From assembly GCA_964252035.1 (NCBI GenBank), contig OZ176201.1: DNA of 64,000 bases; one strand, 5' to 3'. This document shows positions 25,204 to 61,016 of the stretch, piece by piece; the stretch's first letter is position 1, and each line of letters starts with the position of its first letter. The position numbers and the translations under genes were made by a program. This stretch comes from Podarcis erhardii (Eukaryota). Under the pieces are notes generated by a model, which was not told the origin of the DNA, did no database searches, and was given only the letters and a program-made list of their open reading frames with translations.

Positions 25204-32060
<6,857 letters not shown>

Positions 32061-37992: not shown

Positions 37993-38111
37993 TCATAACC
38001 AAAAGTTGCTGGCACTGGAATAACTGTGTTCCTGCCCAGTGCTGAAGGCAGCCACAACATCCTCTTCAACGCTGCTGAACGCCAGACCTTCCACGTCCAC
38101 CTCTGCATCTT
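37993..38111 (-). CDS. MXD3: MXD3 exon 6
   Basis: [12 protein letters not shown]...[14 protein letters not shown]. Confidence 0.93.
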
Positions 38112-41100
38112 CTGTAGCAGAAAAAAAATACATCAGAGTTCTTTACCCATACAGGATCTAGTATCTTTTACAGACACTCCAGAAGGTCACTAGAGGCAAG
38201 GGAGCTGGGACACCTCCAGATGCTGCTGAACTGCAAAACCTGTCGTTCTTGGTCATACTTGCAGAGGGCTGACAGGAGTTGTAGTCTGGCAACATTTGGA
38301 GCTGTCACAAATTCCCCACCGCTGCCTTCCACAACCTGGTACTCTCCATGTTTTGGACTATAGCTCCCATCAACCTGAGCCAGCACAGTTGTGCTGGCTG
38401 AGACTGATGGGACTTATAGACCAAAACGTCTGGAAGGCACCAGGTTGAGGAAGGCTGTAGTAGGAAATGTCCAGTGTACCCTGCTCTTACACTTATGCCT
38501 TCAATAGAACGCGTCCAGCTATGGGGACCGCAGCACAGGCCATCCAATTGTACGGCAACACCCACCTGAATCGGAGCGTTCGGAGGAGAACCGAGAAGAG
38601 TCCAGGCTATCGGTTCGCAGCCTCTCCATGCTGGAATGAGCCAGCAACTCTTCCAGCTGCTGGTGCAGGTTCTGCTGCTCACAGCGTAGCCTCTCCTTCA
38701 GTTGCTGTGCTCTCTGCTCCTGCTCTTCCAGCTTCTGGAAGGGGAAAAGGGGTCAAGGACAATATCCAATAACTATAGCAAATGCTTCAGCTCCTTCCGG
38801 GTTCACCAGCTTTTGTGACTTTTTGGGAAGCAACATTGCACTTCCACCGCAGCTGTCCAGGAGGACTTTGATGTCTGGCTTATAAATTCCCTGGAAACAT
38901 TTGGGTGGCCACAGCTGCTGGCAAGATGAGAGATCACAGGGGTATGATCCAGCAGGGCCAAATGAAGCACCCAATGTGAATTAGTTCATATGCGGTAAAA
39001 TAAAAAGGTATACCCCTTAGCAATGCAACACACTGGTAAAATAAGAGGTTTAGTCACACTCAAGTGATTTTTCACCCCTCTGGAGGTTGGAAGCTGTTTG
39101 ATCCATTTCCAGCCCTACTCAGTAAATCTGTTGGATCCTGCTCATACACCGTCTGTCTCATGTGTTCCAAGTTTAAAGTACAAGGCTGGCAAGGCAACAT
39201 TGAAAAACAGCCAGTAAGCAGGGAAGTGTGTCGCTTACCTTAATATGCAGCCTGGCTCTGTGCAAAAGACTAAGGGTTGTGTAACGAGAGCACTCAGTGT
39301 TCATGGGGACCTGTTGCTTAAGCTGATCCAAACAATGACGCAGCTGAGCCCTCCTGCCAGAGAAAAAGAGATCACAATGTGGGTTCGATGCATGAGATGA
39401 CACGGGAGCTCACCATGTCTCTGGGTAAGGCCTTGAGGCAACTTCCAGGCCCTTACAAAATTGGAAAATGTGTGCCTGTCTCCTCTAGCTAGAGAGCTAT
39501 AGTCCTCCATGTAGTCCAGATCTCAGACTTCATTGTAATTAATTAACTTTATGTACGGAGGGGGAAACAGAACCAGATCTCGTCATCTGCCTGCAACTCT
39601 TACATGCCTGTCTTCCTCAATCCAAGCAAGCTGATATGGGTAGATGGATAAAGGTAGAAGATGTATACAAATTGGGATGGTTATAATAAGTAGCATGAGC
39701 AGAATTACAGACACCCAGATCTAACCAACATGGCTTTCTTCCCATCTCTCATTGTATAGAAATCCTGGTAGAGTGATCCATGGCTACTGCATGCAGGATC
39801 TTAACAGTTGGAAAGCCCTACCATAAGAACACAGAACTAAAAACTGGCCCAAACGAGTGGTCTCAGAAGATCCATAACACGGTCTTCGTCTAGTTATCAG
39901 AGAGGGGTGTGTGTGTGTGTGTGTGTGTGTGTGTATCAGATCGAAGTGATTTGTGTGTGGAGGCGATTAACTCCTTCAGACGTCTTTTAACTTCTTTAAA
40001 AAAACACAGGAGTTCCAATCATGGCTTTCCTGACATCTCATCTATTTACTGTAGGTATTGAGTTTTATGGTCTAAGTTGAACATCTTGTGATCCTCTACC
40101 CCAATGGAAAAAACATGTGAGCATTTTAAATTAAACCAGGAACTCAAAAAAGGCATTTTGGCAAGATATGATGTACAGGGATTGACAATTATGCAAGGTT
40201 AATCAGGAGTGACAAATTTATCACGTGGCACCTTCATTGCAGGAGGTGCCAAGATCTCAATGCTGAAGAGTCAAGACCAGGGGTCAGCAAACTTTTTCAG
40301 CAGGGGGCCGATCCAATGTCCCTCAGACCTTGTTGGGGGCTGGACTTTTTTTTTTTTTAAATGAACGAATTCCTATGCCCCACAAATAATCCAGAGATGC
40401 ATTTTAAATAAAAGCACACATTCTACCCATGTAAAAACACACTGACTCCCGGACTGTCTGCGGGCCAGATTTAGAAGGCGATTGGGCTGGATCCGGCCCG
40501 CGGGCCTTAATTTGCCTACCCATGGTCAATACACTTTATTTACTTAGCTGTGGTAAGTACATGTTAACTTTATCACAATTTGATTGGAAAGTATGTATAG
40601 TCCTTCAAATATTTCACATACTTCTTCCCTTCCATCACCCTCCATGGACATTTTCCTATGTGCATCTCCATTTAAAAATAAAATCCTATACAAAACTAGT
40701 GGTCAACAGCATGCTAACTCCTTATACAAAAATTCGGTGCACATCTCCTAAGTTTGGCAAGGTAGAAGTGGCCTGGGGCAGCCTTCTTACTCAGCTGTAA
40801 AATGCTTTTGCTACTTCATGAATTTCATCTCTCTACTTAGACAGGAAGTGCTCTTATAAAGAGCAGCTGCTATGTTCAGTGCTGTCAACTCCCACTTCCT
40901 ACTGAACATGATAAATGAGAAACTACCCCTCTTCTCCCCGCAACCCCAGCCCTTCCTATATGAAAATTTACCTGTGCTTCTCCAGCTCATTGTGCACAGT
41001 TCTGAAATGAAAGAAGAATAGGGAATAAGATTAATGCATCACATTTAGATTTATAGAAAAATGATAGTTGGTTTTGTTCACATTGTCCACTGAGACAGAA

Positions 41101-42879
41101 AGTTCTCATTCAGTCCCAGTAAAATCCTACCTTCCCAAAGCTCAGTGTCTACTATCCACATAGTGAATATGCAGGACAGGAGAGGAAGAAGATCCATTTC
41201 ATTCTCTAAAGTAGTTTATGAAGAAGCCCAGTAACTGGCACTGTACTGGACCAGTCAAGGTCCTGTTTGCAACATCATCAGAAACCCACACATCCAAGGA
41301 CCCAAGAAACATGTAATAAATAGTGCAAATCCCTAAGTCTGGGGTGGCAGGTACAAGCCTGAGGTAATGTAAAACTAAATGCCTATTTGAGAAGAGTCAG
41401 ATTTCACAGAGAAAATGACAAGTGCAACAGCACACTGCAAGAGGTGGGTGTAACTATTTCTGCAGTAAGAAAGTCGAGAGGTGGTACATAGCTCAGGGAT
41501 GGAGCATATGGTTTGCATGTAGAAGGTTCCAGTTTCAATCCTTAACATCTCTAGGTAGGGCTACAAAAGACCACTGCCAGCTAGTATAGACCAGGCAGGC
41601 AATGTTGTGCTCTCAAAATGTTGTTGGATGGCAACACAGCTGCATGGCTAATTTGCAAGGATGATGGGAGATGGCACTCCGACATCAAATTGGCTACGCC
41701 TGGCATATAGACAGCAATAGAGCTAGGTGGACTAATGCTCTGACTCAAGATAAGGCCGTTTCCTATGTTCTCATGCTTGTGGTTGCGTGACAGTGGCACA
41801 ACTGGTTTTAAAGAACCAGATGTCAGGAATAGTCATAACTGCTAACCTCTATGCCAGGAATGCAGCTCCTCGGAGCTTGCACAATGTCACAGGAAATATG
41901 CAACCATCAATTAAAGCATTTTGTTTCCTGCAATTAGGACTTCTGTCTCCTATTGGATAGTAACGCAGTAGGGTATAGAAACCTCGGGGTCCATGTATTG
42001 AAATGTGAGCCTTGCTCCAGTGGAAAATGTAAAAGCAAAACAAAATACCTAGTCCAATTCCTGAGCAAGGTAAAACCAATGAAAGAGGAGGTTTTGATTT
42101 TCTTAAACCACAAAGCCAAAAACTGATGTCCAGGAGAGAGAAACAACTCAACTGGTGGCTATGGCTTGTATCCAACTAATTTAATTCAGAGTAGACACAC
42201 TGAAATTCATGGATCAGTATTAATCAAACCCAGTAACTTCAGGTCTACTGTCCATACAACTAATGCTGCATTCAAAACTGGTTGCCTCATGTAATATATG
42301 AGCATTTTGTTTCTGGTGGCGACCCCATCACTTTGAAGAAGCGCTTTGCCAACCTCGCTGAGATTTCACACCCCCATCTTCTTTATTTTTATTTCGCTAT
42401 ATAGACTTCTATTTTCAGTTAGTCCATCACCAGATATTCCACTGCAGTTCCAATGGCAATAGTAGAACAAAACCCGGACTCTTACCTGAGGTTTTTCAGG
42501 GCATTCCGAGGCTTGGGCCTCTTCCGGGGCTGCAACGAGTCTTTCCCGGAGTAAGGGGACAGCGAAGCGTAGCCATGTTCGGCTTCTGCGAGACAAAATC
42601 CGAGGCTCGGAACGATTTCGCCTCCGCACCATTTAATAACCCCCAGCCCACTTCTTTTCTAAGGAAGAAACCCACCACCCCATTCCTCCGCCCCACTCCC
42701 ACGGAGGACAGCCGGTCCTGCCTGCCTCCGATCGAGGCAGCCACAGTATGGCCCTCATACCCCGCACAGCCAAGCCACCGCCCCCGACCCTGAGATAGGC
42801 AGGTGGTACCTCTCTCCCTGCGCTCCAGGTACTCCGCCGCTTGCAGCAGCACCTGAATGTTGCTGGCCATGAGCTCCAT
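37993..42879 (-). CDS. MXD3: MAX dimerization protein 3, complete CDS (200 aa)
   Basis: 6 GT-AG exons: 42810-42879, 42486-42585, 40972-41001, 39239-39353, 38566-38734, 37993-38111 (603 nt). Sin3-interaction domain [13 protein letters not shown] and bHLH-Zip [12 protein letters not shown]; position next to PRELID1 as in human. Confidence 0.95.
38566..38734 (-). CDS. MXD3: MXD3 exon 5 (leucine zipper)
   Basis: [16 protein letters not shown]...[15 protein letters not shown]. Confidence 0.94.
39239..39353 (-). CDS. MXD3: MXD3 exon 4 (HLH)
   Basis: [16 protein letters not shown]...[15 protein letters not shown]. Confidence 0.95.
39907..39933. repeat. (GT)n microsatellite
   Basis: Direct reading. 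Confidence 0.9.
40278..40524. mobile_element. hAT (Charlie-like) MITE
   Basis: CAGGGGTCAGCAA / TTGCCTACCCATG ends; 8-bp TSD GTCAAGAC / GTCAATAC. Confidence 0.8.
40972..41001 (-). CDS. MXD3: MXD3 exon 3 (30-nt micro-exon, basic region)
   Basis: [10 protein letters not shown]; cag/gtaaa. Confidence 0.93.
41476..41770 (+). mobile_element. Old tRNA-headed SINE with CR1-like tail
   Basis: TAGCTCAG...GAGCAT head and ...TTCCTATGTTC tail; related copy at 43455-43790. Confidence 0.5.
42486..42585 (-). CDS. MXD3: MXD3 exon 2
   Basis: [16 protein letters not shown]...; cag/gtaag. Confidence 0.93.
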
Positions 42880-43350
42880 GACAACAGACTCGGACCGAGC
42901 GAAGACTTTGTTACACCGTAACCGACCCACTGACTTCGGCTCCGGCTCCGCCCCCTCGAACGCTCCGAGGTTCTAACCCCGCCTCTTCGAACCCTGGCGG
43001 CAGCCGCGGCAGGCCTCGGAACCGGCTCCAGTTTTGGCGCGGGCCGAAAGCTTCGCTGCAGCAGCCGGGAGCTGCTTTTTGAACTGCCCGGAACTCCCAA
43101 CACCCGTGACCCTCTGGAGCTCCGCGAGCCCACCCAGCTGACTTGTTTTGAATCTCACCCTGCGGCGGACGTGGCCTGGGGAACTAGCGCTCTCATTGGC
43201 TGAAAGGCTTGACCAGGCGTGGCTACGTCACTGCAGTTTCAAAACAAATTCGGGCGGGAAAAGGACGGGGCTTCAAATTTGAATTGGAGGCGGGGCCATC
43301 GCTCGCCAGCGGGAGTACTGTATATTGACGTGAGGGATTTTTAAAAATAA
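42490..43350 (-). promoter_or_regulatory. MXD3 CpG island and cell-cycle-type promoter
   Basis: CpG-rich. E2F site TTTTCCCGCC (43253-43262, - strand); CHR-type TTTGAA/TTCAAA at 43078, 43147, 43238, 43272 and 43278; CCAAT boxes at 43195 and 43283; CRE-like sites at 43224 and 43326; GC box near 43288. Confidence 0.75.
42810..42879 (-). CDS. MXD3: MXD3 exon 1 (SID)
   Basis: [23 protein letters not shown]. Confidence 0.93.
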
Positions 43351-46075: not shown

Positions 46076-46130
46076 TTTATTTTTTAGCCCAGAGAAGACA
46101 AATTGGCAACAGTAACAGATAGCATTTATT
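46076..46130 (-). terminator. Two AATAAA poly(A) signals of the LST2-like gene
   Basis: TTTATT at 46076-46081 and 46125-46130, about 730-780 nt past the stop codon. Confidence 0.55.
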
Positions 46131-46856
46131 CAAGTATTCAGGAGAAGAACCAGCTCTGCCTGGTTTCAAAAAGGAGCTATAAATCTCCTGGAGAAGCTTC
46201 AAAAGCGTCGTCCACACAACAGTGTGGCAGGAGAGTTTTACAAGAAAATACATTGCATATGAAGATTGTTGAAGCCCTTAGCTGTATCAGAAGCTGGTGG
46301 GCAAAATGTCATGGCTATCCTCCACAAGGTTGCTGCTGGACTAGAGATCCTGCCTTTCAGTTCCAGTGAAAGGCTCCATAAAGCCCTTATTGCACATACA
46401 CCCAAATCTAGTAATGCAACCTCAGAGATTTGTCAAAAATAAATCCACAGGACTGATGACTATCATGGGGCTCTCCCAAAAGCCAGGCAACCAGCACCAG
46501 GCAATCCCTCCATAGGCCACAATTTACTCTAAGGAAAGAGTAATGGGGGGAAAGATGCTTTTACTGTCATTTACAAGAACTTGCCGAAACATCTTCTACA
46601 GCAAGCTCTAGCTCCAGCCCAAGGAATCCCACTGGGAGTTATTTATATTAAACAGCAAAGATTCAATCCCCAGCTATTAAAGCCTGGCGTTCCCATCTCT
46701 TGCCCTGACCACCAAGGCCTTTGGAAAGTTCCCAGGAGCATCCTAATAAGACAAGTGTGGTTGTTCCCACAGTCCTTTGCTGACAGTACAGGCTGTTGCC
46801 ACTTCCAAAGTCTTTGGTGTTTCCACAGGCACAGAAGGTGTTTGAGGCAGCTCCAA

Positions 46857-46982
46857 TCAACTAGTATTTTTGCTAGTGGAAGGCAAGTGGGTGGTGTAGC
46901 AGTGTGTACAAATGCGGACTGGCTTCAGCTGCTTGAAGTGGGGCAGAGGTGCCAAGTGTGACGAGCAGCGAGAGCAGAAGAT
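46857..46982 (-). CDS. LST2-like last coding exon, FYVE second half
   Basis: [41 protein letters not shown]. Confidence 0.95.
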
Positions 46983-49900
46983 CTGGGGAGGAAATAAGAT
47001 TGTGCATCAAATAGAGCCGAGGGCCATGTGGTACTACAAGCCCCACTTCACATGAAAGAGATGCGGTTGCCCTAATCCTTTGGCCAAGAAACAATAAAAA
47101 ACATGACTGACCCAGTAGAGGTCCCAACAGGGACTTAGATTGCAAGCTAGTTCAATTATTGCAACCTCTCCCCATCCCTCCCATCTGGAGAGGCCATCCT
47201 TTCAGGCACAACCTTTACTCACAATATTTTTTTAAAGGCATCTTTCCAGGGGAGCATGTAAGCCAGTCTTGCCCAACCAGGGACCCCCTATATGCTTTGA
47301 ACTACAACTTCCCTCATTCCTGACCACTGGGCCATGCTGGCTGGGGCTTATGAGGTTGCAGCCCAAAAGATATGGACACCAAGCCCAAGCCCTGGCCCAT
47401 GACAAGATACGCTATAGTTAAAGTGTTCACAGGCATGGTCTGCCTGGTGCTTTTGCAGCTGCTGCTGCTGCTGCTTCCACTAGAATGAAAGTCCTAGGAG
47501 GTCCTTATTTAGCCCCATCGCCTACCTTGCCACAACTTCGGCAGTGGTGCCGTCTGCGAAGAAAGGTGAAAGGCACACGGCAAGCCATGCAGTGGCTGCA
47601 AGTGCTGTCTGGCACCCAGTCTGGTGGTGCTAAGACATCTGGAAAAGAACAGAAGGGCAGTTGGGGACATGGCCACATGTCTTCTAAAGTCCGTCAGAGC
47701 CATAAAACTTCCCCCAGCTAAAATGTGTTAAGAGAACTCCGATTACAGAGAGATATATATGTTTATTCAGTGACAAAGCAAAAAGTAGTTCACGAGGAGT
47801 CGCAAGTCATCTGCCCAGGCACAAAGCCTTGGGGCTCTAGAGTGGGGCACAGTTTGGACAACACAGCCCCTAAAATGTAAGGCAAGAGGGGGACTGTGCA
47901 GGATCTTTTGCTTACTGCAAACCAAACAGCAAAATTCCTTTTGTCAGCAAGGCCAGCCCAGGGTCCCTGCCTGTGCATAGGAGATCCTTGAACATGGGAT
48001 CAACCTTTCTTGAAGGCTTGGCAGAGTGAGAGAGAGAAGCTCAAACCAAATTCCCCGGGACAGCAGAGATGCTCAGGAAGAGGCCTGTTTCACATTCTGG
48101 GCTCTCACCTTCTCTCCCAGTGCCTCCCCGGCTTCTGGAGCAGAGAGCACAGTCTGCCAGGTGAGAAGCTGTTGGTAGCACATGGACCTCCACCTCTGAA
48201 AAGGAAAAAAGAAAAGCTATAAGCATGCAAGTTGCTACTGCTCAAGGGAAAAGGCATCTATGCCAGGGCAAAGATACAACTGGCAGACACCTCAGCTGTA
48301 TGTTCCCATAAATGTTCCATTCATTATCCTTAAAAAAGGGGTCCAACTACATGTTACGAGGGAGACACATAATCAGACATACCCAACTTCGTTTTAAAAT
48401 GGGGAGGGAGAAAGAGGGATGATGATGCCTAAGCACCAGCCACAATGTGGTGCTTGGAGTGTGTGTTTTCTATGCTTATATGAAGAACTAAAAAGTACTC
48501 CATGTTCTTCACCTCAATATGCATCCCCATGCTCACTGGTCTAATGCACAACTGAAAGATGAAGGGGCAGGAACCTGGATTGAGCAAAGTCACGCTGCAA
48601 TTAGCAGCAATCCTTTGAGCAAAGAGAATGTTTTATTGGGCTTAGAGCAAGGGTGTCATTAACAAACTCAGTTCCAGGGACTATCACACAGTACCAACAT
48701 GTAGCTAAAGGAGCCCTGCTCTCATTCTGAGGTCCATTAGCCAACTGAAGTAATTAGCACAAGATAAGATATTCTTTTCAGTTGTGGTGCCGAAAATGAA
48801 ATTACTTCTCAACAGACATTCATTTGGTCGCCTATTTGCCCACAAACCCTTAAGAGTGTTCTATTTAACTTATATGCAGAATTCATCATGCGAAAGGCTG
48901 GGCTGGATGAATCCCAAGCCGGAATTAAGATCGCCGGAAGAAATATCAACAACCTCAGATATGCAGATGATACAACCTTGATGGCAGAAAGTGAAGAGGA
49001 ATTAAAGAACCTTTTATTGAGGGTGAAAGAGGAGAGCGCAAAATATGGTCTGAAGCTCAACATCAAAAAACGAAGATCATGGCCACTGGGCCCATCACCT
49101 CCTGGCAAATAGAAGGGGAAGAAATGGAGGCAGTGAGAGATTTTACTTTCTTGGGCTCCATGATCACTGCAGATGGTGACAGCAGTCACGAAATTAAAAG
49201 ACGCCTGCTCCTTGGGAGAAAGGCGATGGCAAACCCTAGACAGCATCTTAAAAAGCAGAGACATCACCTTGCCAACAAAGGTCCATATAGTTAAAGCCAT
49301 GGTTCTCCCAGTAGTGATGTATGGAAGTGAGAGCTGGACCATAAAGAAGGCTGATTGCCGAAGAATTGATGCTTTGAATTATGGTGCTGGAGGAGACTCT
49401 TGAGAGTCCCATGGACTGCAAGAAGATCAAACGCATTCATTCTTAAGGAAATCAGCCCTGAGTACTCACTGGAAGGACAGATCGTGAAGCTGAGGCTCCA
49501 ATACTTTGGCCACCTCATGAGAAGAGAAGACTCCCTGGAAAAGAACCTGATGTTGGGAAAGATTGAGGGCACAAGGAGAAGGGGATGACAGAGGACGAGA
49601 TGGTTGGACAGTGTTCTCATGAGTCTGACCAAACAAACATGAGTCTGACCAAACTGCGGGAGGCAGTGGAAGACAGGAGTGCCTGCCGTGCTCTGGTCCA
49701 TGGGGTCACAAAGAGTTGGACTAACTACTAAACAACGACTAAATGACTAAACAACAACAAATTGCTTATGGTAGGCTTTCCCCCCAGTGCGGCCTCTGAT
49801 GAAGTTTTTTCTTTGTGGTTGCTGATATGGTTTCCACTACGCAGTTTTTGCTGCTGTTATTATTTTGCTTTTATTTTGTTTGTGAATTCTGTGATTTTTT

Positions 49901-52900
49901 TTGTAAGCCACATCAAGTCTGATTTTAGCAGAGAGAGATAAGATATATATGTTGAGATAAATAAATAGAAAACAATGAAACAGCCCAGAGTCCTTGAAAT
50001 TTATGTAGGATTGATTTAAGTATTACAAACAGCCAGCCCCAATCTGGTGCCTGCTGGTCCAATAAGTTTTGGAATACAATTCCCATCTGTGACCATTAGT
50101 CATACTAATTTGGAAGACCTTAGGTTGGGGAAGGCTACATGACAGTATAAATGACTCAGTATGTGTCACTAACATGACTGCCCAGCACTTTTAGTGGAGC
50201 AGCATTACATGTGCATGCCATATCTAGCTTCTGCACATGCAAGCACTAAGGAAATGCTATGAAACCATGCACGAGTCAAGGAGTGTCACTCACGGCCAGT
50301 GTCTGTCACCTCCTGTTCCTCTGCCCGGGATGTCACAATTTTAAATACAGTCTTCAGGATGGCACGCAGATCACTTGCAAAGTTGGTTTGGAGCTGGTCT
50401 GCCACTCCTACACAAACACAACACAGCAATTTGAGTAATATCCATTGCACAATGACACAAGGGCAAGAGATAAACATGTAGATTTTAGCCAACTAACACA
50501 AAAGTCCTTCCATAGAGGGAAACAGTAGTCAACAGCTTCTAACCAAGCAATTCTTTCCATCTCAATTCTGAACCAACAGGATACTATTTTTTCACTACTC
50601 TTTCCTGCTGAAGAGACTAATTCTCAATTTAGGTGCTAAACCTTCAGGATTAAGGCTAGGCAAGAGAGTTCATACAGTATCTGAGCTGAACCAAAACTTA
50701 CAGTTCAAAATCCTTAGGCAACATGGGAGCAATACTTGCCTGCTTTACAGGCAAATTCTTGGGCTTCTTAGCTAATGTGTGTGAAGCACTTTCAGCTGAG
50801 TCATTCAAAATTTAAGTACTTGCCCCCAATGAATATATATTTTATTAAAATGGATGCTATTCCCTAATCATGTAATAAGACAATAGCTGCCATCTTCTGA
50901 GCTATTTTTAATGGCATGTGGAACAACTTGTTCTAACTTGCCATCATATCCAGATCGGGATATTACAGCTTGTAGTCACTGTGATGCTTAACTAAGGAGT
51001 CGCCAACCTTTTGTGTGCTAGGCAGTACATTTGGAATTTTGAGAATTCTGCCATGAGCAGCGGTCACAAAATGGCTGTTGTGAGCGGAGGGGCATGCCGC
51101 AAAATAGCTGTCACAGCTAAAAGATAAGGAGAGGCGGGAGTTCAAAGTGGTGTGGGCAAGCCCCTCCATCAGCCATCCTATCAGTGTCACAGGAGGAAGG
51201 CACCTAACATTAGCTACTGCTCGGGCAGAGAAGATCTTTGCACCTCTCCTCTGTTCAGAACAGATGGGAGTATGAGCCTCCACTGTTGGCTTCCAAGGAA
51301 ATGTGGGCATGTTAAAGGGGGAGTGTTGAAGAGAAGCTGTGCAGGGAAAGCAAACAGTCTCTTGTCAGCTGTGGATTTTTGAATGGATGCTTTACTGAGA
51401 CTTTTGCATGTAGCATAAGCAGTATTGGTGGGGAATTTTATCTCAAGCCCTGCTCCCCCTAAAAGCTTATTTAATTCTAGAAAACCAACTGCTTCCTGCC
51501 AGGATCTCTTCCCCAACAGGGCAACAAGAAGCTTGTTTGGAGGTATGATCAGGTACGCCGTCCTTCCACTTGGACATATCTGTTCCTTTCCAAAATCTTG
51601 ACCAGCAGGAATGGTCAGGAGTGGTAGGAATACATTCCAAACATAAGGAACACCTGTTCACTTGTCCAGTTTGTCCAAATCAGGGAACCTACAGAGGCTT
51701 GTCTGCTTATTTTTTTAAAAAAAAAAACTTCCTTTCTGCTGCCAACCATACCCCTGCCAGCCAATGCCCCAGTTGCATTATGGGATATTGGATGATGAAG
51801 ACCTCCCTTATCCAGCAAAAACAGGGTACTCACCAGAGATGCAGACAAACAGTGTGTGGATCATGTCCTCTGTAGTGGTATAACGGGCTCGCAGTTCTGC
51901 CCAACGAGCCGTCTGCGGAGCTTGTGTGTTCACTCCTGCCTTGGTGCTACTAGACCCCTGACCACGCTGCCTGTTGAACAAGCAGCATTAGAATGGGTAT
52001 TAAGGGGTTACTCTCTCACCTTCTGCACTCCAGTTCTTTCAAAGTTCTCCCTTCTCCTCTCCCCCCCCCCAAAAAAAACAGCAACAACCCAAAGGCATCA
52101 TCTGCCCTAAATACATGAATGCCAGGCAAGCAAATGCCAAGGAAAGGGTAAGCAATATATACAGTAAATGTTCCCACATGAGCTTTGGGTCAGCTAAGAT
52201 TTATGCACCCCTTCTTTTCATTTCCAAGAGACAAGAGCCACTGACTCCTCAAACGCTGAAAGAGGTAGTGCTCTGACAGGGTTTGTCAACTACCTTGGTT
52301 CTCTCCAAAAACATTTGAAAACCAAGGCACAGCTTCTGATTGGCTGCAGGAGCTTCCTGCACTCAATCAGAAGCTGCGTCAGATGTTCGGCTTCCAAAAA
52401 ACGTTCTCAAACACTTATTTCCAGGTTTGCAGCCTTCGCTAGCCAAAATAATCGAGTCACAAGGCATTCGAGAACCAAGGTACGACTGTACTGCCACCTA
52501 GCTGCAAAGTTTCGATTACTCCTTTACCTCTCATGTAGTCCACACTGCTCAAAAGCTACAAGTGCTCCTGATTCCTGCAGAAGTACTGATGAACCCTTTC
52601 CATGGTCTTGATGCTGTCATGGATAACACTTTTAGTGGCTTTCACGTTAAGGATTTACTGTGGAAGAGCCATGGCCTTGTTTGCTCACTTTTACAGAGCA
52701 CCTACATGACACTGTCAACAAAACAAACCCTTCTTATGCTTTCCCTGCTTAGCTTTATGTCCCCCAGAACTTAAAAAAACCCCCAGAAATCCAACTTTAT
52801 TTTTACTCGGCAGAAAAGCTACAATAGAGGAAGAGGAAGAAGAGTTTGGATTTGATATCCCGCCTTTCACTCCCTTTAAGGAGTCTCAAAGCGGCTAACA

Positions 52901-55900
52901 ATCTCCTTTCCCTTCCTCCCTCACAACAAACACTTTGTGAGGTGAGTGGAGCTGAGAGACTTCAAAGAAGTGTGACTGGCCCAAGGTCACCCAGCAGCTG
53001 CAGGTGGAGGAGCGGGGAAGCGAACCCGGTCCCCCAGATTACGAGACTACCACTCTTAACCACTACACCACACTGGCTCTGATATATTGTCATTATATCA
53101 GTCTCCCCACACCACACCTAAACTGTGATCCAGGGTGGTGGTGCACAATCGTGATCTGGTGCGCAGTAAAGCGGAACAGAGCAATTAATCTTTTCCACAC
53201 GGACAATGGGCCCAATGAAATCAGCATACAATCTCAGATTCCAACATTTTGGGCTGAGGGCAGGTGGGTGAAGAGAAGTGGTTCTTGGTCATACCTTGGG
53301 ACAGCCGAGACACGTGGTGTCGCAGCGCCTCGGAAGTCAGGAGAATCTATATCCTTGAAGGGCTGTGAATCTGTAGTGCTCTCATTCAGTACACGCTTCT
53401 CCAACATGTAAAGTTCTTCCTTGGACAACACACGCAGCAAATCCCTATAAGGGAGAAGGCTCATAAAGGAGGCATCTAGGAAAACAAGACACTGAAATTG
53501 CCCTAAAAGAACAGACTGGATAACCCAGCTCTCACGTAGTACCCTGGAAAGAAGGTCAGATCTACTCTCGTTATGGTAGGGCTTCAGTGCAATGTGGAAA
53601 CCAAGCTCGCAAAAAGGAGCTCATGCCCCCCACACCATGTGCAAATGCATATAATTTGTACCCCCTGATGAGGCAACCTGCTGCTGCATCTCTTCCCCCA
53701 GCACGCACACAAACTCTGATCATGTATCCAGAACATCTTGCTTCATCCTCTGTTAACTGTATGTCTGATTACAGGAGAAGGACACCACTAACATTTATGC
53801 AATAATTTCCATTTAACTGAGGGTAGATCAAACATCAGCAAAGTTATGCGGTAGAATATTTATTGGATTGTGCAGCTTCAGACTGCAGGGTGGCAGGGAT
53901 TGCATTTTTCAAATGAGCTATATTAGCCCTTCCCGTGACTGCACTAAAGCACCACAGTCAGGTGATTTTGCTGAACATGTAGCTTGGGTTGTTAACACAA
54001 ACCCCTCCACAAAGACCCAGACTCAGTTCCAGTTGAGTTCCTGTGCAACAGCTGCTTTTATAGACACTCACCTGATTTTTCTAAGCAAGACGTAAAAGGG
54101 GCTAAAGACTCTGGATATCTCCTCAGGCCTCCGATCCAAATTGAGGGGTCCATCTGGGTAGATCAGAAGACCACTGTGTACGGGGCAAAGAAAGAAAACA
54201 AAACACACAGGGAGGATTGGATTTCCTGTTCTACTGCTGCTATGTATGTTTTTCCTAATACATTAATTATTATTGGAGGTGGGGGTTTCCCCCCAAAATG
54301 TGAGAACTTTCAAAATAATAATGGGTAAAGATTAATGGGAATTGCTCTTTCGTCATATCGTTTGGGCAGAGAATTCTCAAAATGAAAGCTGTGACACTGT
54401 AGTAAACCTTGTCCAAGTTTCCTTTTTTAATTTCTTTTCCAAGATAGCAAAATTTCCCTAACTTTAAATTACTTCTTTGGTTAGTTAACGGATGTGCATA
54501 TTTCAGCTCTGATGCCACTGCTCTGCCTATATTTTGTGCCCACCACTCTATAAATTCCTACTAACAGCTATGTTTCCCAAGGAGCTTTTAGTGTGTTACC
54601 CACATTGAAGGGGAAACTCAAAAGTAACACAGCCACTTACTGCTGAGATGGGGACATAGTGCCGTACTTTGAAGAACCACCACGAGTGGAATTTGACAAG
54701 GCAAATGCTGGTGGGAAAGGGCCACGTGCAAATAACTGTGTGCTGGTACCTCAGGCAGTAGCTGCCCCAATCAGGATCTAAAGGAGCAACAGCTGGCTTT
54801 GGGAAAGTCATCCCACCTATAAAGTAGTCACACACACCGAGAATAGGCAGGGAGGATGGCCATTTGGAGAGAGGGACAGTCCGAAAGTTTTAAATACAGC
54901 ACAAGCAAGCAATCTTCCCAACTGCATGAGCCAGAGCAGTGGTGGAAAACTTTTGGGGGCCTCTGGGACTCATTTGGTGATACGTCACATCCTCCCCACC
55001 ACCATGCAGACACACATGAGAGATGGGGAGAGGAACGTGTTTAGATTGCCAAGATGCCATTGCACACCTTCCTGCTGCCCAGAAGATTGGCAAGCGCCGA
55101 GGAACTTATAGATGTGTAGCTGATTTATGTACCGTGAAGGAAGAAGTAAAATGAGAGACCTCCGTTTAGACAAATGTGACTTGCCCCAGTTTCTTCTGTT
55201 AAAAATGCACACCTGTCTTGCCAGCTTTGACAGCTATAATTGCCAGATTGAACATTCCACATGTCTCGAGTTTATCGAGCTACCGGGCTCCATACTCAAC
55301 CAAAAGATGACAGGTAAAACCACATACCTGATAATGGCCAGGCGGGGAATGGTGAACATCAGCTGCGGTTCATACCCATCAATCGTCTCCTGAGTCAAGT
55401 AGCCAAGTTTCAGAGCTCTAGATGAGCGAGGGAGAGAAGGGGCAGGAAATGAGGAAGGAAGGCGTGGGCAGAAGTCAAAATCCCTAGTCCAAGTAGATAA
55501 TTATCCTAGACCTCACTTGAGCCAAGCTTCCCACATCAAAAAGGAGCATTGGCTGGTCTGCGTCATAAGGTTTTGTAAAGACCCATCTTTGTGCCCATGT
55601 TTTCTCTGATCCATAAAACAAGACCCTGCTTATTATGCTTTAATCTCTTGATTTTTTAAAAACATGTTTTTATTCTACTGCTTTGTTGGTTCTGGAAAAT
55701 GATTGTATTTTTTAAAAATGATACTGTTGGTATTTTATGTTGTATGTTTCCAAGAAATATAAAAAACATAAAGCCGTTTATAAATACATCTAAACAAATA
55801 AAATAAAAACAATAAAATAAGATGAATGTTCATTCTATTGGAGAGGTAGATAGTGCTTGCCCAAGGATCTTTCCAAGCCACAGAGCGCAAAATCCTCACC

Positions 55901-58900
55901 TAGCCACAGTTTCACAGAATAGCACAACAATCTCCTGCTGCCTATAGATTTCTTCGGGCGACTTCACCGAGACTAAAGATGACACGTAACTGGAAAAGAG
56001 AAACAAGCTTTGAAACCCAGCTTAGCCACCACTCTCAGCACCTACCTTGCATACAAGACCAAGACATAGCCCTAATTTTCTGGTCTCCCTTTGAAACTCA
56101 CACTTTGGCAGCATAAACTTCAGAAGGCAGCAGTGGTCCTTTCCAGAGATTCCCCTTGCTGGCCAGTCACTACTTTTATTGGTTCTGGCCAGGTTGTTTT
56201 TTAGCATCTTTTCATTTTCATATTTAAAAAGCAGCTGTTAGAAGTTCCCTCCTCTTCTGTCCACATTGAACCACTTTCTGCTCCTTAGCTTAATCCACTG
56301 CATTGCCTAAAAAGGTCAGCCTATGGACATGCCCAATTCCTTAAAGCGAAACATGTACACATAACATGAACACCACTGTTGAAATATCTGCAATGGCTGC
56401 CCATCTACTATTGAAACAAGCTTAAAGTCCTTGTGATAACTCACAAAGCCCCAAACAACTTAGGTCCAGGGCACATTTGGGACCACCTAAACCCTTATAT
56501 CTCAACTTGATCACTGAGATCACCTGCAGGTGTATTGCTGGTTGTTCTCCCACGTTGGTGACACACATTTGACATCGACACAAAAGAGAGACTTTAGTGC
56601 GATCTGCCTAGTCCTGTGGAATGCTCTGCCAGCACCTTCTGTTTCAACCTTTAAATGCCTGCTGAAAACTCTTTTATTCCACCAGGCTTATGCAGACAAT
56701 TCAGAATACATATTTCCATGACGGTCAGTTGATGCTCTACGATTTTAATTTTTTAATGAGTTTTTCTTATGTATCAATATTATTGTACACTGCCTTGAAC
56801 CTTTGCATGATAGAGTGGTATATAAATATTAGTTATAAAGAGAAAAATAGTCAGAATGTAAGAACCCTACTGGATCAGCCTGGAGACCTATCTAGTTATA
56901 CAGCTGCCAATCAGATGTCTCTGAGAAGCAGGTCTGCTCAGCACCCACCTCAGCTCAAACTCAGCAAAGAGCATATCAAAACGAATCAATGCCCTGCGGA
57001 TAGGCTCTGAATAGGGTCCAGGTTGGTTCAGGCTTTGTTCCCGGAGTACCGTCCGCACCAACTCCAAGCTGCACAGCAGATCCTTGGCCAGAGGTCGCAG
57101 CCGTATCCCATCTGCCTCGTCCACATCAATGTAGGTGCGTGCCATCAAACACTGGAGCGAAGAAGAGTTTGAATTTGGATTTGATATCCTGCTTTATCAC
57201 TACCCGTAGGAGTCTCAAAGCGGCTAACATTCTCCTTTCCCTTCCTCCCCCACAACAAACACTCTGTGAGGTGAGTGGGGCTGAGAGACTTCAGAGAAGT
57301 GTGACTAGCCTAAGGTCACCCAGCAGCTGCAGCTGCAGGTGGAGGAGCGGAGACGCGAACCCGGTTCACCAGATTACGAGTCTACCACTCTTAACCACTA
57401 CACCACACTGGAAGGAAGAGTGACAGCTCAGGAACACTCTGTGTCCTTTGACTGCCTCTCCCGCCATATCACACAAGCTATTTCAGGGCTGGGATGAGCC
57501 CCCCAGCAACTGCCAAAGCCTAACTCCAGGAATGGAACCATAATACATCCCAATGAAGCAAGCAAAATTCCCAAGCGCACAGCAATCATCTACAGCCAGA
57601 GAAATCACAGCTAAAGGAATCCAGGCTGTGAGTAATGAAAGAGGAAAAGGAGAATATGATGACACTAGATGCACCAGGTGTTAGGAATTTCCCCTATTCC
57701 AGCTGTTCATGTTTGTAGCCTAAAATGGAGCTGTACTCAAGAACAGAACATACAAAGAGTGGTTGAATGTTCTAGTCCACCAAATCAGATGGCACAGTGG
57801 GTGCGGCTGTTAACCAGAAGTTTGGTGGTTTGGGCCCACCCAAGGATGGCTAGGGGCTGGATTCCTGCATTGCACAGGGTTGGAGTAGATGGCCCCCATG
57901 ACGCCGTCCAACTCTACAGCTCAATGATTGAATGAAATCCCTCCCGCATGGCTCACCTCAGCAGCAAACAGCATGTGGTTCCGGAGATTGTCCACGAGGA
58001 GGTCTTCGGGGAATTTGATGACATAGTCACGGCCATGACGCTCCTTGGGGATACACTCATCCATAATTCGCTCTATGATGGACAGCAGTTCGGTCTAGGA
58101 GAATGGGTAGAGTGGTTGTTACCATCAACACAAGGACATTCTGGAGACACCAGATGAGCTGATAAGGCAGGAAGCTAGGTCTTCCCAGAAAATTACTGAT
58201 GGGCCAGGGTAGATTTTGGCATTTCCATTGCCAAACATCTCAGCCAGAAATGGAACTCAGCGGTGAGGATTTAGCAAGATAAAACACACTGTTCTGTATT
58301 CTGTGTTGATCGGAAGAGGTGAAAATTGGGGGAGAGGGGGACCTCAGACTGCAGCCGCTCCATATTCCAAGAGTGTCCCACATTTTTTTTCCTGCCACAG
58401 GAAATTTACTCTTAAAATAGGAGGAGGAAATCATTTTCCTTTAAAAAACAACAACAATAGCCAACCCCAAATGCACACAAGCACAGAGGGAGCACTACAC
58501 TCTGGAAGATTGCTGTGTATAATCTCCATCTTGATCCTTGCCAGTCAGAGGCATGCCATGTGCACTGCTCCACTGAAGCAGCCAGGGACTGTAGACCATG
58601 TACTTTGGAAAGAATCTCCAAAGGAGGGTGCAATGAGACCAATGTGGGTCTTGCCATCTCCTAATTGGAGTATATGTGCATTTAAAGTGAGATGATGAGT
58701 AGGAAGGGGAAGCAAAATCCCTTACCACACTTCCCCATTGGAAATCTCTTATTTTGAGTTGTGTGCTGGGTTCCCCCCCCAGCCAAAGTTGCTTTTGGTC
58801 ATGGAGTTTCCCCAAGCAAACAGCTAGAAATGTGTCTGTGTGTGTGTCAGCTACTGCCACCTATCAATACTGTGCTTTGAAGTGCCACCCTCCCTCCCCT

Positions 58901-59085
58901 TCTGATCATCATGTCTAGTTTGGCCCTTAAAGAGAATGCCTTACCTGACTAAGGTGCAGCTGATTTAATAGAACCAGGTATTGCTGAGGATCTGTCTCTA
59001 CATCCAGACAGTTGATCTCCGTCACCACTTGGGTCACTCGCTCATCGGCATAGAAAAACTGTGACAGTAACCTCGGATCGGAGCG
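46857..59085 (-). CDS. Lateral signaling target 2 (LST2/ZFYVE28)-like FYVE-domain protein, paralog; first coding exon not located
   Basis: 12 GT-AG exons: 58945-59085, 57957-58094, 56949-57151, 55900-55989, 55328-55417, 54072-54173, 53295-53444, 51834-51970, 50294-50407, 48109-48195, 47526-47638, 46857-46982. Total 1491 nt = 496 aa plus TGA, with no internal stops. LST2 hallmarks: [56 protein letters not shown]: PDWVPD...[17 protein letters not shown]...PVRICTHC. Confidence 0.93.
47526..47638 (-). CDS. LST2-like exon, FYVE first half
   Basis: [34 protein letters not shown]. Confidence 0.95.
48109..48195 (-). CDS. LST2-like exon (...HLADCALC...)
   Basis: 87 nt, cag/gtgag; resembles EDCALC of ZFYVE28. 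Confidence 0.88.
48861..49760 (+). mobile_element. RTE-BovB LINE, 5'-truncated 3' fragment
   Basis: Frameshifted RT: [57 protein letters not shown]; (CAA)n-like tail. Confidence 0.92.
50294..50407 (-). CDS. LST2-like exon ([22 protein letters not shown])
   Basis: 114 nt, tag/gtgag. Confidence 0.92.
51834..51970 (-). CDS. LST2-like exon (...[21 protein letters not shown])
   Basis: 137 nt, cag/gtgag, in-frame stop just upstream of the acceptor. Confidence 0.85.
52301..52490. mobile_element. Tc1/mariner-type MITE fragment
   Basis: Right TIR CCAAGGTACGACTG-TA. Confidence 0.65.
52827..53079 (-). mobile_element. tRNA-derived squamate SINE with (CTT)n tail
   Basis: Head GAGCCAGTGTGGTGTAGTGG (A-box); highly similar to the copy at 57157-57411. 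Confidence 0.85.
53295..53444 (-). CDS. LST2-like exon ([17 protein letters not shown]...)
   Basis: tag acceptor is clear; AG|gtatga donor chosen because it keeps phase 2. Confidence 0.8.
54072..54173 (-). CDS. LST2-like exon ([33 protein letters not shown])
   Basis: 102 nt, cag/gtgag. Confidence 0.92.
55328..55417 (-). CDS. LST2-like exon ([29 protein letters not shown])
   Basis: 90 nt, tag/gtatg. Confidence 0.92.
55900..55989 (-). CDS. LST2-like exon ([29 protein letters not shown])
   Basis: 90 nt, cag/gtgag. Confidence 0.92.
56575..56840 (+). mobile_element. L2 LINE 3' end
   Basis: LWNALP...[10 protein letters not shown] followed by an AT-rich tail. Confidence 0.6.
56949..57151 (-). 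CDS. LST2-like exon (CLMART...RPLAKDL...FAEFEL)
   Basis: 203 nt, cag/gtggg. Confidence 0.92.
57157..57411 (-). mobile_element. tRNA-derived squamate SINE with (CTT)n tail, inserted at an exon acceptor
   Basis: Same family as 52827; flanked by an 8-bp direct repeat ACACTGGA (57149-57156 and 57405-57412). Confidence 0.88.
57957..58094 (-). CDS. LST2-like exon ([16 protein letters not shown]...[20 protein letters not shown])
   Basis: 138 nt, tag/gtgag. Confidence 0.92.
58945..59085 (-). CDS. LST2-like exon ([17 protein letters not shown]...)
   Basis: 141 nt, cag/gtaag. Confidence 0.92.
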
Positions 59086-60104
59086 CTGAATAGAGATAAG
59101 AAAGCATGGTTTATTCACAGCTCATCCCTATGAGGCAATGCTGGTACTCATGAACAGAAGTTGAGGTAGTAAACTGGTTTCTGAACGATACCATTTCAGA
59201 TTGCAGGTGGGGGAAATTACATGACTGAATGTGCTTCACTGCGAGGGGAAGAAAACTAGATGATGTTGATGATGATACCCCTACCATCTGACTGCGTTGC
59301 TAAAACCACTCTGGGTTTAGTCTAGTTTTTCCCCTGATGTATGTTTTAAATAAACAGTAAATGCAAGATTATTTTTGCAATGGAGGAACATTCAGTCATG
59401 TGAGGTGCTACTTGCATTCTGAAATGGTACAGTCCAGAAACAGGTTTACTGCTACATCTTCTGTGTTTGAAAATTAGGCCTCGTCTTTGATGCAACTTCC
59501 TGTGATCCCTTTCAGAAACTGCTTTGAATAGCTCTAAGAACATAAATACATAAAGATTTTGAAGATGAGTATCTATTAGCAGAAGACATGGTAAGGATTA
59601 AGTCCCTATTCTCTACAAGATTTAGATCAGTGGAAAGATATGAACTAAAAAGAGCGGTGCTAGATCAGACCAAGGGCCCATCACCCAGTAGCCTGCCAGT
59701 TTTCAACAGACGCTTCTGAGAAGCCCAGTCGTAGTTAACACCCATTTATAAACTCGTCCTCCACACATTTACCTAATCCGCTTTAAAGCCATCTAACCCT
59801 GCAGCCATCACCACACCTTGTGGCAGCATGTACCATAAGTTAATTATATGTTGTGTTACGTGAAGCCATCTATTTCAAGTTCCTAGACACCACCAGAATC
59901 ACATTTCAGGCACCTGGGGGGAAGCAACTTTGCATCCAGTCATTACATACATACAACCATACGCCATTAAGTAACATTTTTTGCAGAGTTTGGGCACAAA
60001 AGGCAGTACTTGAATTGTTGTATCCAGCCAGATTGCAAGGATTTAGGTCAAGAATAAAACAAACAAACAAACAAACAAACAGAGGGCCTTCCAGTTCACC
60101 AAAG

Positions 60105-60150
60105 TGCTCAGGCACGCACCCCAGGCCTGCTCAGGCACGCACCCCAGGCC
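60105..60150. repeat. Perfect 23-bp tandem duplication
   Basis: TGCTCAGGCACGCACCCCAGGCC x2. Confidence 0.9.
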
Positions 60151-60701: not shown

Positions 60702-61016
60702 TACTGTAGTTTTCTGTGTATAAGATGATTTTTATTATTATTTAAAAATGATAAAAATTGGGGGTCTTCTTATACACGGATAGTGCAGAGGGGGGATGAG
60801 CGATTTGGTCGCAGCCGCGACCAGGATATTGTGAGCGGCGGTCAATTGGGTGAGCGATTGTCAGCAATCATACCAAAAAAAGCCCAACAACTGTGGACAA
60901 CCCCCCCCCCCAAAGCTTAACAACTCTGGGCAATCTCCCCGCATTTCCTTAATTTGGAGTCCCAAAAAATAGAGGTCTTATACAGGGGGGCGTGCTATAC
61001 ACGGAAAAATGCGGTA
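60702..61016. mobile_element. TcMar (pogo/Tc2-like) MITE
   Basis: Imperfect TIR TACTGTAGTTTTCTGTGTATA / TATACACGGAAAAATGCGGTA. Confidence 0.7.

What the first reader, a model, noticed from the sequence alone, without database searches (positions are those of the whole stretch)
46857..59085. Intact second LST2/ZFYVE28 gene: probable whole-genome-duplication ohnolog absent from the human locus
Seen: 12 exons splice into an uninterrupted 496-aa ORF with the LST2 N-terminal helical domain and a complete FYVE finger (WxxD, RRHHCR, eight Cys). Its first six exon sizes (141/138/203/90/90/102) match those I recall for ZFYVE28, but the protein is clearly diverged (e.g. [12 protein letters not shown] vs FYYADEELNQVA; NHMLFAAE vs GQLWFGAE). 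Established: human 5q35 runs NSD1-RAB24-PRELID1-MXD3-LMAN2 with no gene here, while the paralogous 4p16.3 block carries FGFR3, NSD2, MXD4 and ZFYVE28, with ZFYVE28 directly upstream of MXD4 on the same strand. That is the arrangement seen here relative to MXD3. Inference: this is a 2R ohnolog retained in this reptile, an essentially uncharacterised candidate endosomal regulator of EGFR sorting. It may exist in databases only as an unnamed LST2-homolog model.
Basis: partly seen in the sequence, partly recalled or inferred. Interest (0 to 1): 0.85.

Follow-up and report, generated by a model that had tools for sequence, protein, structure and literature searches.

The report
Second LST2 gene beside MXD3
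This wall-lizard window carries a real, expressed and conserved ancient sister copy of the endosomal gene ZFYVE28/LST2 next to MXD3; placental mammals appear to have lost it, but databases already predict it and a 2011 paper already noted it.

Summary
On the minus strand, 12 exons (59085 to 46857, all AG/GT) splice into 496 codons plus a stop. They encode an LST2-type helical N-domain and a complete FYVE finger. The model has no start codon. A 14-codon first exon (MLPAAVRRWLHRPK) lies beyond the window, as transcripts and the Lacerta and Anolis loci show.

RNA contigs from four studies use all six junctions tested. dN/dS is about 0.11. The protein matches RefSeq "lateral signaling target protein 2 homolog" of lacertids (3 differences to Podarcis raffonei).

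A maximum-likelihood tree gives two jawed-vertebrate clades. One is true ZFYVE28. The other is a faster-evolving paralog clade running from sharks to birds, platypus and marsupials, and it holds this gene. The AU test rejects ZFYVE28 orthology (p about 1e-61). The paralog sits directly upstream of MXD3 in lizards, koala and gar. No placental protein appeared among the 120 listed hits to the koala paralog.

The ohnolog reading is therefore supported, but it is not new. The gene is annotated, unnamed, in well over 100 species. McFerrin and Atchley (2011) already described an unnamed ZFYVE28 duplicate linked to Mxd3.

One modest new point: the paralog lacks ZFYVE28's mTORC1 docking (TOS) motif and its S670 region. 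Interest is low to moderate.

The parts
58945..59085 (-). It starts at an acceptor AG with RSDPRLL and holds no ATG.
   Evidence: The RNA junction 58945/58094 is seen in 4 runs, and a loose end at 59087 encodes ..AAVRRWLHRPK of exon 1.
57957..58094 (-). Coding exon 3, 138 nt. It includes IKFPED, whose Lys corresponds to human LST2 K87.
56949..57151 (-). Coding exon 4, 203 nt. A SINE insertion abuts its acceptor.
   Evidence: (junctions 57151/57957 and 55989/56949).
55900..55989 (-). Coding exon 5, 90 nt.
55328..55417 (-). Coding exon 6, 90 nt.
54072..54173 (-). Coding exon 7, 102 nt. It ends the helical N-domain.
53295..53444 (-). Coding exon 8, 150 nt. This is the shortened disordered-linker exon: 426 nt in koala, 678 in gar, 885 in whale shark.
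   Evidence: The RNA loose end at 53294 continues into exon 9.
51834..51970 (-). Coding exon 9, 137 nt. It ends in HTLFVCIS-G.
50294..50407 (-). Coding exon 10, 114 nt. It encodes the conserved helix [21 protein letters not shown].
48109..48195 (-). Coding exon 11, 87 nt, containing the ADCALC motif.
47526..47638 (-). Coding exon 12, 113 nt. This is the first half of the FYVE finger (WVPD, Cxx[11 protein letters not shown]).
46857..46982 (-). Coding exon 13, 126 nt including the TGA stop. This is the second half of the FYVE finger (CSRC, RICTHC).
46105..46856 (-). 3' UTR of about 730 nt, with AATAAA at 46130. The 46105 end is estimated from the signal and was not mapped.
   Evidence: In one search, a 2361-nt RNA contig runs 1309 nt beyond exon 8, which is 577 nt of coding sequence plus about 732 nt of UTR.
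37996..42972 (-). Context: MXD3 (bHLH-zipper gene), directly downstream on the same strand.
   Evidence: The tblastn of the alligator fusion model P0007 matches at 39358-37996. The HLH Pfam hit is at 39176-39409. The exon-1 [26 protein letters not shown] is.

Best explanation
This is most of a functional gene for the second vertebrate LST2-family protein. It is an ancient paralog of ZFYVE28, most likely an ohnolog from the early vertebrate genome duplications. It sits head-to-tail upstream of MXD3 in the NSD1-RAB24-PRELID1-MXD3 block of a Podarcis-like lacertid lizard.

The 510-aa product has four parts. The first is a roughly 280-residue all-helical LST2 N-domain that keeps the lysine corresponding to human K87. 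Next come a short disordered linker, then two conserved helices, and finally a canonical FYVE finger.

The mechanism is inferred, not shown. The FYVE finger would bind PI3P and place the protein on endosomal membranes. The helical domain would engage the same kind of partners as ZFYVE28/LST2, which restrains EGFR signalling by favouring receptor degradation. The paralog has no counterpart of human residues 313-704. It therefore lacks the RAPTOR-docking TOS motif and the mTORC1 site S670, so it is probably not under the mTORC1 control described for ZFYVE28.

The gene is retained under purifying selection in non-placental jawed vertebrates and appears to have been lost on the placental stem.
For: Gene model: 12 canonical exons and 496 codons.

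Expression: four RNA data sets from four studies show exon-only depth. All six tested junctions fall at the predicted bases with GT..AG ends. One 2361-nt contig spans every exon laid and also carries exon 1 and the 3' UTR.

Constraint: dN/dS is 0.11 against Lacerta agilis (bootstrap CI 0.03-0.23) and 0.12 against Anolis sagrei (CI 0.09-0.17). In the N-domain it is 0.03-0.08.

Identity: the protein is 98.6% identical to XP_032996348.1 of L. agilis and differs at 3 residues from the P. raffonei model.

Family: the alignment to human LST2 (PDB 9f43_G) scores 340 bits over residues 5-312 and 192 bits over 705-877. Pfam FYVE scores 79.5 bits. The AlphaFold model has a helical region at residues 11-290 with pLDDT mostly 80-97. 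Its FYVE part superposes on endofin, Vps27p and EEA1 at 1.2-2.0 A, and the 20 best Swiss-Prot fold hits are all LST2 proteins.

Paralogy: the ZFYVE28 clade has support 100/97 and the paralog clade 100/100. Each follows the species tree from sharks upward, and the AU test gives p = 1e-61. Both genes occur in the same bird, turtle and platypus genomes.

Synteny: an HLH gene follows the paralog on the same strand in Lacerta, Anolis, koala and gar. NSD1, RAB24 and PRELID1 are confirmed in the window.

TOS motif: RVFFMDDL is conserved in six ZFYVE28 proteins from zebrafish to echidna. It is absent from the window protein and from 16 of the 18 other paralogs examined; the two hits there do not look like the motif. 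The roles of TOS, S670 and K87 come from PMC11348030.
Against: The start-codon exon and the promoter are outside the window, so intactness of this individual's gene is not fully shown. The RNA runs come from a coded 'organism A' whose contigs are 95-99% alike; it is probably a congener, not necessarily this species.

No binding, localisation or EGFR assay exists for any member of the paralog clade. After the duplication the paralog evolved about four times faster than ZFYVE28, so its function may have drifted. Absence of a TOS consensus does not exclude another mode of mTORC1 or kinase control.

Placental loss rests on the lack of annotated proteins among the 120 listed hits, not on a DNA search of the MXD3-LMAN2 interval. 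The hagfish sequence is unresolved, so the duplication is not tied to a particular round.
Confidence: 0.88

Rival explanations
1. It is the lizard's only ZFYVE28 gene, moved next to MXD3 by translocation and then diverged.
For: Databases give it the same protein name as ZFYVE28. [quoted passage not shown] I did not retrieve a squamate ZFYVE28 protein: the 120 listed hits were filled by birds and turtles.
Against: The tree puts it with the shark-to-marsupial paralog clade at 100/100 support. The AU test rejects squamate paralogs plus ZFYVE28 as one clade at p = 1e-61. The same position upstream of MXD3 is found in koala and gar. Birds, turtles and platypus have both genes. The protein lacks the TOS motif that is invariant in ZFYVE28 from zebrafish to echidna.
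Confidence: 0.01
2. The paralog arose by an ancient small-scale (segmental or tandem) duplication in a stem vertebrate, not by whole-genome duplication.
For: The gene tree only dates the split to after amphioxus and echinoderms and before crown jawed vertebrates. It cannot show the mode. I did not verify the MXD4-ZFYVE28 adjacency with tools: no HLH gene lay within 10 kb of ZFYVE28 in zebrafish, turtle or echidna.
Against: Several neighbouring gene pairs are duplicated together. NSD1, MXD3 and PRELID1 lie here, and a FAM193 gene lies next to the gar paralog. Their partners NSD2, MXD4 and FAM193A lie on human 4p16.3 with ZFYVE28; that is established map knowledge, and PMC3177325 reports Mxd4-ZFYVE28 linkage in opossum, chicken and Xenopus. 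Block-wise paralogy of 4p16 and 5q35 is a classic signature of whole-genome duplication.
Confidence: 0.08
3. The locus is a decaying or non-functional copy that merely still looks open.
For: The clade evolves about four times faster than ZFYVE28. The linker exon has shrunk from 885 nt in whale shark to 150 nt here. A SINE sits on a splice acceptor. The gene was lost in placentals.
Against: There are no stops or frameshifts in 12 exons, and all splice sites are canonical. Spliced transcripts appear in four studies, and they use the acceptor next to the SINE. dN/dS is 0.11-0.12, and 0.03-0.08 in the N-domain. In the 40-sequence alignment, 87 columns are invariant between the paralog and ZFYVE28 proteins.
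Confidence: 0.02

Closest known systems
ZFYVE28 / LST2 (human Q9HCC9; PDB 9f43, 9f45)
   Same: The architecture matches: a helical N-domain (aligned to human residues 5-312), the pre-FYVE helices and the FYVE finger (human 705-877), and a conserved Lys equivalent to K87. Coding exons 2-7 have identical sizes. The fold matches too.
   Different: It lies in a separate gene-tree clade. Identity to ZFYVE28 proteins is about 50%. It has no counterpart of human residues 313-704, so no TOS motif (401-405), no S670, and no S334 or S368. The protein is 510 aa against 887-925 aa. The gene spans about 17-46 kb against 185-286 kb in echidna and turtle. It is linked to MXD3, PRELID1 and NSD1 rather than to CFAP99 and MXD4.
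RefSeq and UniProt models 'lateral signaling target protein 2 homolog' of lacertids (XP_032996348.1 Lacerta agilis, XP_053233216.1 Podarcis raffonei, XP_028574318 P. muralis / A0A670IJK1)
   Same: This is the same gene. The 13-exon structure is identical, and there are 3 to 7 amino-acid differences over 496 residues.
   Different: Those models include the first coding exon, which lies outside this window. None is identical to the window protein, so the window probably comes from another Podarcis-like species or allele.
'ZFYVE28*', the unnamed duplicate linked to Mxd3 in McFerrin and Atchley 2011 (PMC3177325)
   Different: That paper used it only as a synteny marker in five species. It gave no phylogeny, expression, selection analysis or domain comparison of the gene itself.
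Invertebrate LST-2 (C. elegans Q9TZD0, Drosophila Q9VB70)
   Same: They share the single-copy ancestral architecture and fold. Like the paralog, they have no TOS motif; PMC11348030 states the motif is found only in vertebrate LST2.
   Different: They are outgroups to both vertebrate clades.

Membership tests
LST2 family (LST-2 / ZFYVE28-like FYVE proteins) | Homologous N-terminal LST2 helical domain | tested here: met
   The alignment to human LST2 residues 5-312 scores 339.7 bits. The AlphaFold model is helical over residues 11-290 with high confidence. The top 20 Swiss-Prot fold hits are all LST2 proteins.
LST2 family (LST-2 / ZFYVE28-like FYVE proteins) | C-terminal FYVE finger with WxxD, R(R/K)HHCR, RVC and eight zinc-binding Cys | tested here: met
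   Pfam PF01363 scores 79.5 bits against a cut-off of 27.8. WVPD, RRRHHCR and four CxxC pairs are read directly from exons 12-13. RVC is RIC here, a conservative change. The domain superposes on endofin, Vps27p and EEA1 at 1.2-2.0 A.
LST2 family (LST-2 / ZFYVE28-like FYVE proteins) | Shared gene structure | tested here: met
   Coding exons 2-7 are 141/138/203/90/90/102 nt in this window, in Lacerta, Anolis, gar and whale shark paralogs, and in zebrafish ZFYVE28. Koala has 99 for the last of these.
LST2 family (LST-2 / ZFYVE28-like FYVE proteins) | PI3P-dependent endosomal binding and down-regulation of EGFR | not testable with these tools
   This is known only for ZFYVE28/LST2 (PMC11348030 and works cited there). 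No data exist for the paralog.
ZFYVE28 orthologous group | Groups with ZFYVE28 in a gene tree | tested here: not met
   It sits in a separate clade with 100/100 support. The constrained tree is worse by 324 lnL units, AU p = 1e-61.
ZFYVE28 orthologous group | Long central region carrying the TOS motif (FFMDD) and the S670 mTORC1 site | tested here: not met
   The linker is about 90 aa against about 500 aa. No TOS-like motif was found, while RVFFMDDL is invariant in six ZFYVE28 proteins. There is no counterpart of human residues 313-704.
ZFYVE28 orthologous group | Genomic neighbourhood of CFAP99 and MXD4 | tested here: not met
   The neighbours here are MXD3, PRELID1, RAB24 and NSD1. ZFYVE28 of zebrafish and turtle lies beside CFAP99.
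Vertebrate whole-genome-duplication ohnolog pair | Duplication node after the split from invertebrate chordates and before the jawed-vertebrate radiation | tested here: met
   Both clades hold chondrichthyans and bony vertebrates and are jointly sister to amphioxus, echinoderm and arthropod sequences. The hagfish is unresolved.
Vertebrate whole-genome-duplication ohnolog pair | Both copies embedded in paralogous blocks of many duplicated neighbours | tested here: inconclusive
   The MXD3-side block was verified here and in four other species. The 4p16-side block (NSD2, MXD4, FAM193A, FGFR3) rests on established human map knowledge and PMC3177325. I could not see MXD4 within 10 kb of ZFYVE28 in three loci.

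The most novel reading that the evidence does not exclude
The LST2 pair may have divided its regulation after duplication. ZFYVE28 acquired a long linker with a RAPTOR-docking TOS motif and the S670 switch, and so became an mTORC1-controlled brake on EGFR. The MXD3-linked paralog kept the ancestral TOS-less state and would act as a constitutive, mTORC1-independent endosomal LST2. If so, its loss on the placental stem left mammals such as humans with only the mTORC1-gated form. Chicken, lizard or marsupial cells would then be a natural system for separating the two modes.
Probability: 0.3. Interest if true: 0.45.

Novelty: already known. Interest (0 to 1): 0.25.

Why it matters
The result settles that the open frame is a genuine, transcribed and constrained gene. 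It also gives the correct evolutionary label for something databases name identically to ZFYVE28, or even call ZFYVE28. That confusion can corrupt orthology tables and expression studies in birds, reptiles, amphibians, fishes, monotremes and marsupials.

Biologically, it is one more ancient duplicate that placentals lost. It is of some interest to people studying LST2, mTORC1 and EGFR feedback, because it is a natural variant without the TOS motif and S670 region. It does not overturn anything and it was already recorded in the literature as a synteny marker.

Tried and rejected
1. I looked for the start-codon exon in 59086-64000 with motif regexes, with tblastn of four homologs, and with the exon-1 sequence recovered from RNA (up to 6 mismatches). 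Nothing was found. I concluded it lies outside the window, which fits the 14.7-17.9 kb first introns of Lacerta and Anolis.

2. I tried to retrieve a squamate ZFYVE28 to show both genes in a lizard. Coexistence is therefore shown for birds, turtles and platypus, not for squamates.

3. I tried to show the ZFYVE28-MXD4 adjacency directly. The platypus and echidna X2 isoforms were not on record. The echidna and box-turtle genes are too long for DNA to be returned, and no HLH gene lies within 10 kb. Zebrafish has CFAP99 upstream and a 5'-nucleotidase gene downstream. The platypus paralog locus was also not on record, and the whale shark paralog has no gene within 10 kb downstream.

4. A strict TOS consensus (hydrophobic residue at position 5) found nothing even in ZFYVE28. 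I relaxed it after reading that the motif is FFMDD.

5. Fold search of the helical N-domain against the PDB gave only weak helical-bundle hits (vinculin head, FAT domains; E above 0.1). I do not interpret these.

6. I considered and rejected the translocated-ortholog, pseudogene and recent-duplicate readings (see rival explanations).


Full report
**What is there**

The window's minus strand between 59085 and 46857 holds twelve open segments. Each is bounded by a polypyrimidine-AG acceptor and a GT donor. Spliced together they give 1491 nt, which is 496 codons plus TGA. An AATAAA signal lies 726 nt after the stop, at 46130.

The frame begins with RSDPRLL immediately after an acceptor site and has no ATG. 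Homologs begin with a 14-residue exon, MLPAA(V/L)R(R/K)WLHRPK. No such exon exists in the 4.9 kb of window upstream. In Lacerta agilis and Anolis sagrei the first intron is 14.7 and 17.9 kb. The gene therefore has 13 coding exons and a 510-aa product, and the window holds exons 2-13.

**Surroundings**

Downstream on the same strand lies MXD3. Its exon-1 ORF is near 42800, its HLH exon is at 39176-39409, and later exons reach about 37996. Beyond it come PRELID1 on the plus strand (PRELI domain, 34920-35192) and RAB24 on the minus strand (Ras-type exons at 31740-32060 and 29439-29900). The 3' half of NSD1 follows on the plus strand, with AWS at 11017-11397 and the C5HCH domain at 15451-17325. 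The order NSD1-RAB24-PRELID1-MXD3 matches the human 5q35 order known from the human map, with one extra gene after MXD3.

**Is it expressed and constrained?**

I laid RNA-derived contigs from four runs of four studies (one coded organism, 95-99% alike) on 53200-59100. Depth falls on the exons and is zero in most intron bins. The exception is a SINE whose copies are abundant in transcripts generally.

All six introns in the stretch are skipped at exactly the predicted bases, with CT..AC ends on the plus strand, that is GT..AG on the gene strand. A loose end at 59087 reads, on the gene strand, the codons for ..AAVRRWLHRPK, which is exon 1. A loose end at 53294 continues into exon 9. One 2361-nt contig spans every exon laid.

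Codon comparison with the orthologous loci gives dN/dS = 0.11 against L. agilis (472 codons, 22 differing, 6 non-synonymous; bootstrap CI 0.03-0.23). Against A. sagrei it is 0.12 (CI 0.09-0.17). The values are 0.03-0.08 in the N-domain and 0.24-0.38 in the linker. This is a transcribed gene under purifying selection.

**What protein is it?**

The model is 98.6% identical to XP_032996348.1 of L. agilis. It differs at 3, 5 and 6-7 residues from the Podarcis raffonei, P. lilfordi and P. muralis models, all named 'lateral signaling target protein 2 homolog'. The window is therefore from a Podarcis-like lacertid.

Against solved structures the best hit is human LST2/ZFYVE28 (9f43 chain G). The N-domain aligns to human 5-312 (340 bits) and the C-terminal part to human 705-877 (192 bits). 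Nothing corresponds to human 313-704. Pfam finds a full FYVE domain at 79.5 bits.

The AlphaFold model, built from a 40-sequence alignment, has mean pLDDT 74. It has these parts:
- an all-helical domain at residues 11-290,
- a disordered segment at 291-336,
- further helices mainly between 336 and 397,
- the FYVE finger.

The FYVE part superposes on endofin, Vps27p and EEA1 at 1.2-2.0 A. The 20 best Swiss-Prot fold matches are all LST2 proteins from nematodes to human. The helical domain has no significant match among solved structures.

**Ortholog or paralog?**

A profile-free scan of 1.8 billion cluster representatives with exon 4 gave two tiers. Proteins of about 500-770 aa were 66-72% identical, and ZFYVE28-type proteins of about 900 aa were 45-52% identical.

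The first tier is annotated in many groups:
- turtles, crocodilians, more than 60 birds and many squamates,
- frogs, axolotl, lungfish and coelacanth,
- gar, bowfin, sturgeon, bichir and basal teleosts,
- sharks and rays,
- platypus and eight marsupials.

True ZFYVE28 of about 925 aa occurs in the same bird, turtle and platypus genomes on other chromosomes.

I built a maximum-likelihood tree of 50 sequences (611 columns, LG+C20). It recovers a ZFYVE28 clade (100/97) and a paralog clade (100/100, stem length 0.5). Each follows the species tree from cartilaginous fishes upward. Together they form a vertebrate clade (100/100) against amphioxus, echinoderm and arthropod sequences. The window protein is sister to Lacerta within squamates. 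The hagfish sequence is unresolved.

Forcing the squamate proteins to join ZFYVE28 lowers the log-likelihood by 324, AU p = 1e-61. After the split the paralog lineage accumulated roughly four times as much change as ZFYVE28.

**Synteny elsewhere**

The paralog is followed on the same strand by an HLH gene of about 200 aa in L. agilis (with PRELID1 beyond), A. sagrei, koala and spotted gar. In gar a FAM193 gene lies upstream. An alligator database model even fuses the paralog with MXD3.

ZFYVE28 of zebrafish and box turtle lies beside CFAP99, as on human 4p16.3. I could not confirm the MXD4 adjacency with the tools. It rests on map knowledge and on McFerrin and Atchley.

**Loss in placentals**

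I queried with the koala paralog. The 120 listed hits comprise marsupials, platypus, sauropsids, amphibians and fishes down to E = 1e-134, with no placental protein. Given how densely placentals are annotated, this indicates loss or pseudogenisation on the placental stem. It is still an argument from absence of annotation.

**How it probably works**

Work on ZFYVE28/LST2 shows a protein whose FYVE domain alone targets early endosomes and which negatively regulates EGFR. mTORC1 docks on a TOS motif (residues 401-405) and phosphorylates S670. This promotes K87 mono-ubiquitination, stabilises the protein and keeps it off endosomes (PMC11348030).

In my comparison, RVFFMDDL is invariant in ZFYVE28 from zebrafish to echidna. 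It is absent from the window protein and from 16 of the 18 other paralogs examined. The two hits there (koala FILER, lungfish FDMDK) do not resemble the motif. The K87-equivalent Lys in KFP(E/D)(E/D) is invariant in both clades.

The linker exon shrinks from 885 nt in whale shark to 678 in gar, 426 in koala and 150-153 in lizards. [quoted passage not shown] The simplest reading is that ZFYVE28 gained mTORC1 control after the duplication, while the paralog kept a TOS-less state.

I therefore propose, as inference, a PI3P-binding endosomal LST2 that is not gated by mTORC1. No experiment exists for any member of this clade.

**Novelty**

The gene is present as an automatic model in RefSeq and UniProt for this genus and for well over a hundred other species. 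Its name does not distinguish it from ZFYVE28, and one UniProt entry calls it ZFYVE28 outright. McFerrin and Atchley (Genome Biol Evol 2011, PMC3177325) already drew 'ZFYVE28*, an unnamed duplicate of ZFYVE28'. [quoted passage not shown]

- the explicit phylogeny,
- the taxonomic range and the placental loss,
- the RNA evidence and the selection evidence,
- the missing first exon,
- the absence of the TOS and S670 module.

The scan's own notes hold only this same finding and a neighbouring note on the SINE.

Noticed in passing
window 57152-57412 (minus-strand intron 3, abutting the exon-4 acceptor); second copy at 52842-53076: A SINE of about 240-260 nt sits directly against the acceptor of coding exon 4. 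It is absent at the orthologous site of Lacerta agilis. There, about 16 nt including the acceptor region align to both sides of the insertion, which looks like a target-site duplication. RNA contigs still splice at 57151. The element draws very high RNA depth from copies elsewhere. This matches the scan's note s1-254877.
   Followed up: partly
L001-L006 and window exon 53295-53444: The linker exon (coding exon 8) of the paralog shrinks stepwise: 885 nt in whale shark, 678 in gar, 426 in koala and 150-153 in lizards. The axolotl paralog instead has a linker of about 930 aa and a protein of 1320-1362 aa.
   Followed up: partly
database proteins P0007, P0139, P0275: Three annotation problems surfaced. 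The alligator model KYO47939.1 fuses the paralog with MXD3. A Platysternon ortholog is labelled 'ATP-binding cassette sub-family A member 2'. [quoted passage not shown] NCBI also gives both paralogs the same protein name.
   Followed up: no
loci: The two genes differ strikingly in size. The paralog spans about 13-46 kb, whereas ZFYVE28 spans 185 kb in echidna and 286 kb in box turtle.
   Followed up: no
window 32001-34000: A GC-rich stretch (64% GC) lies between the 5' ends of RAB24 (minus strand) and PRELID1 (plus strand). It is probably a shared CpG-island promoter.
   Followed up: no
window 18911-19053: A run of 143 N lies downstream of the NSD1 last exon.
   Followed up: no
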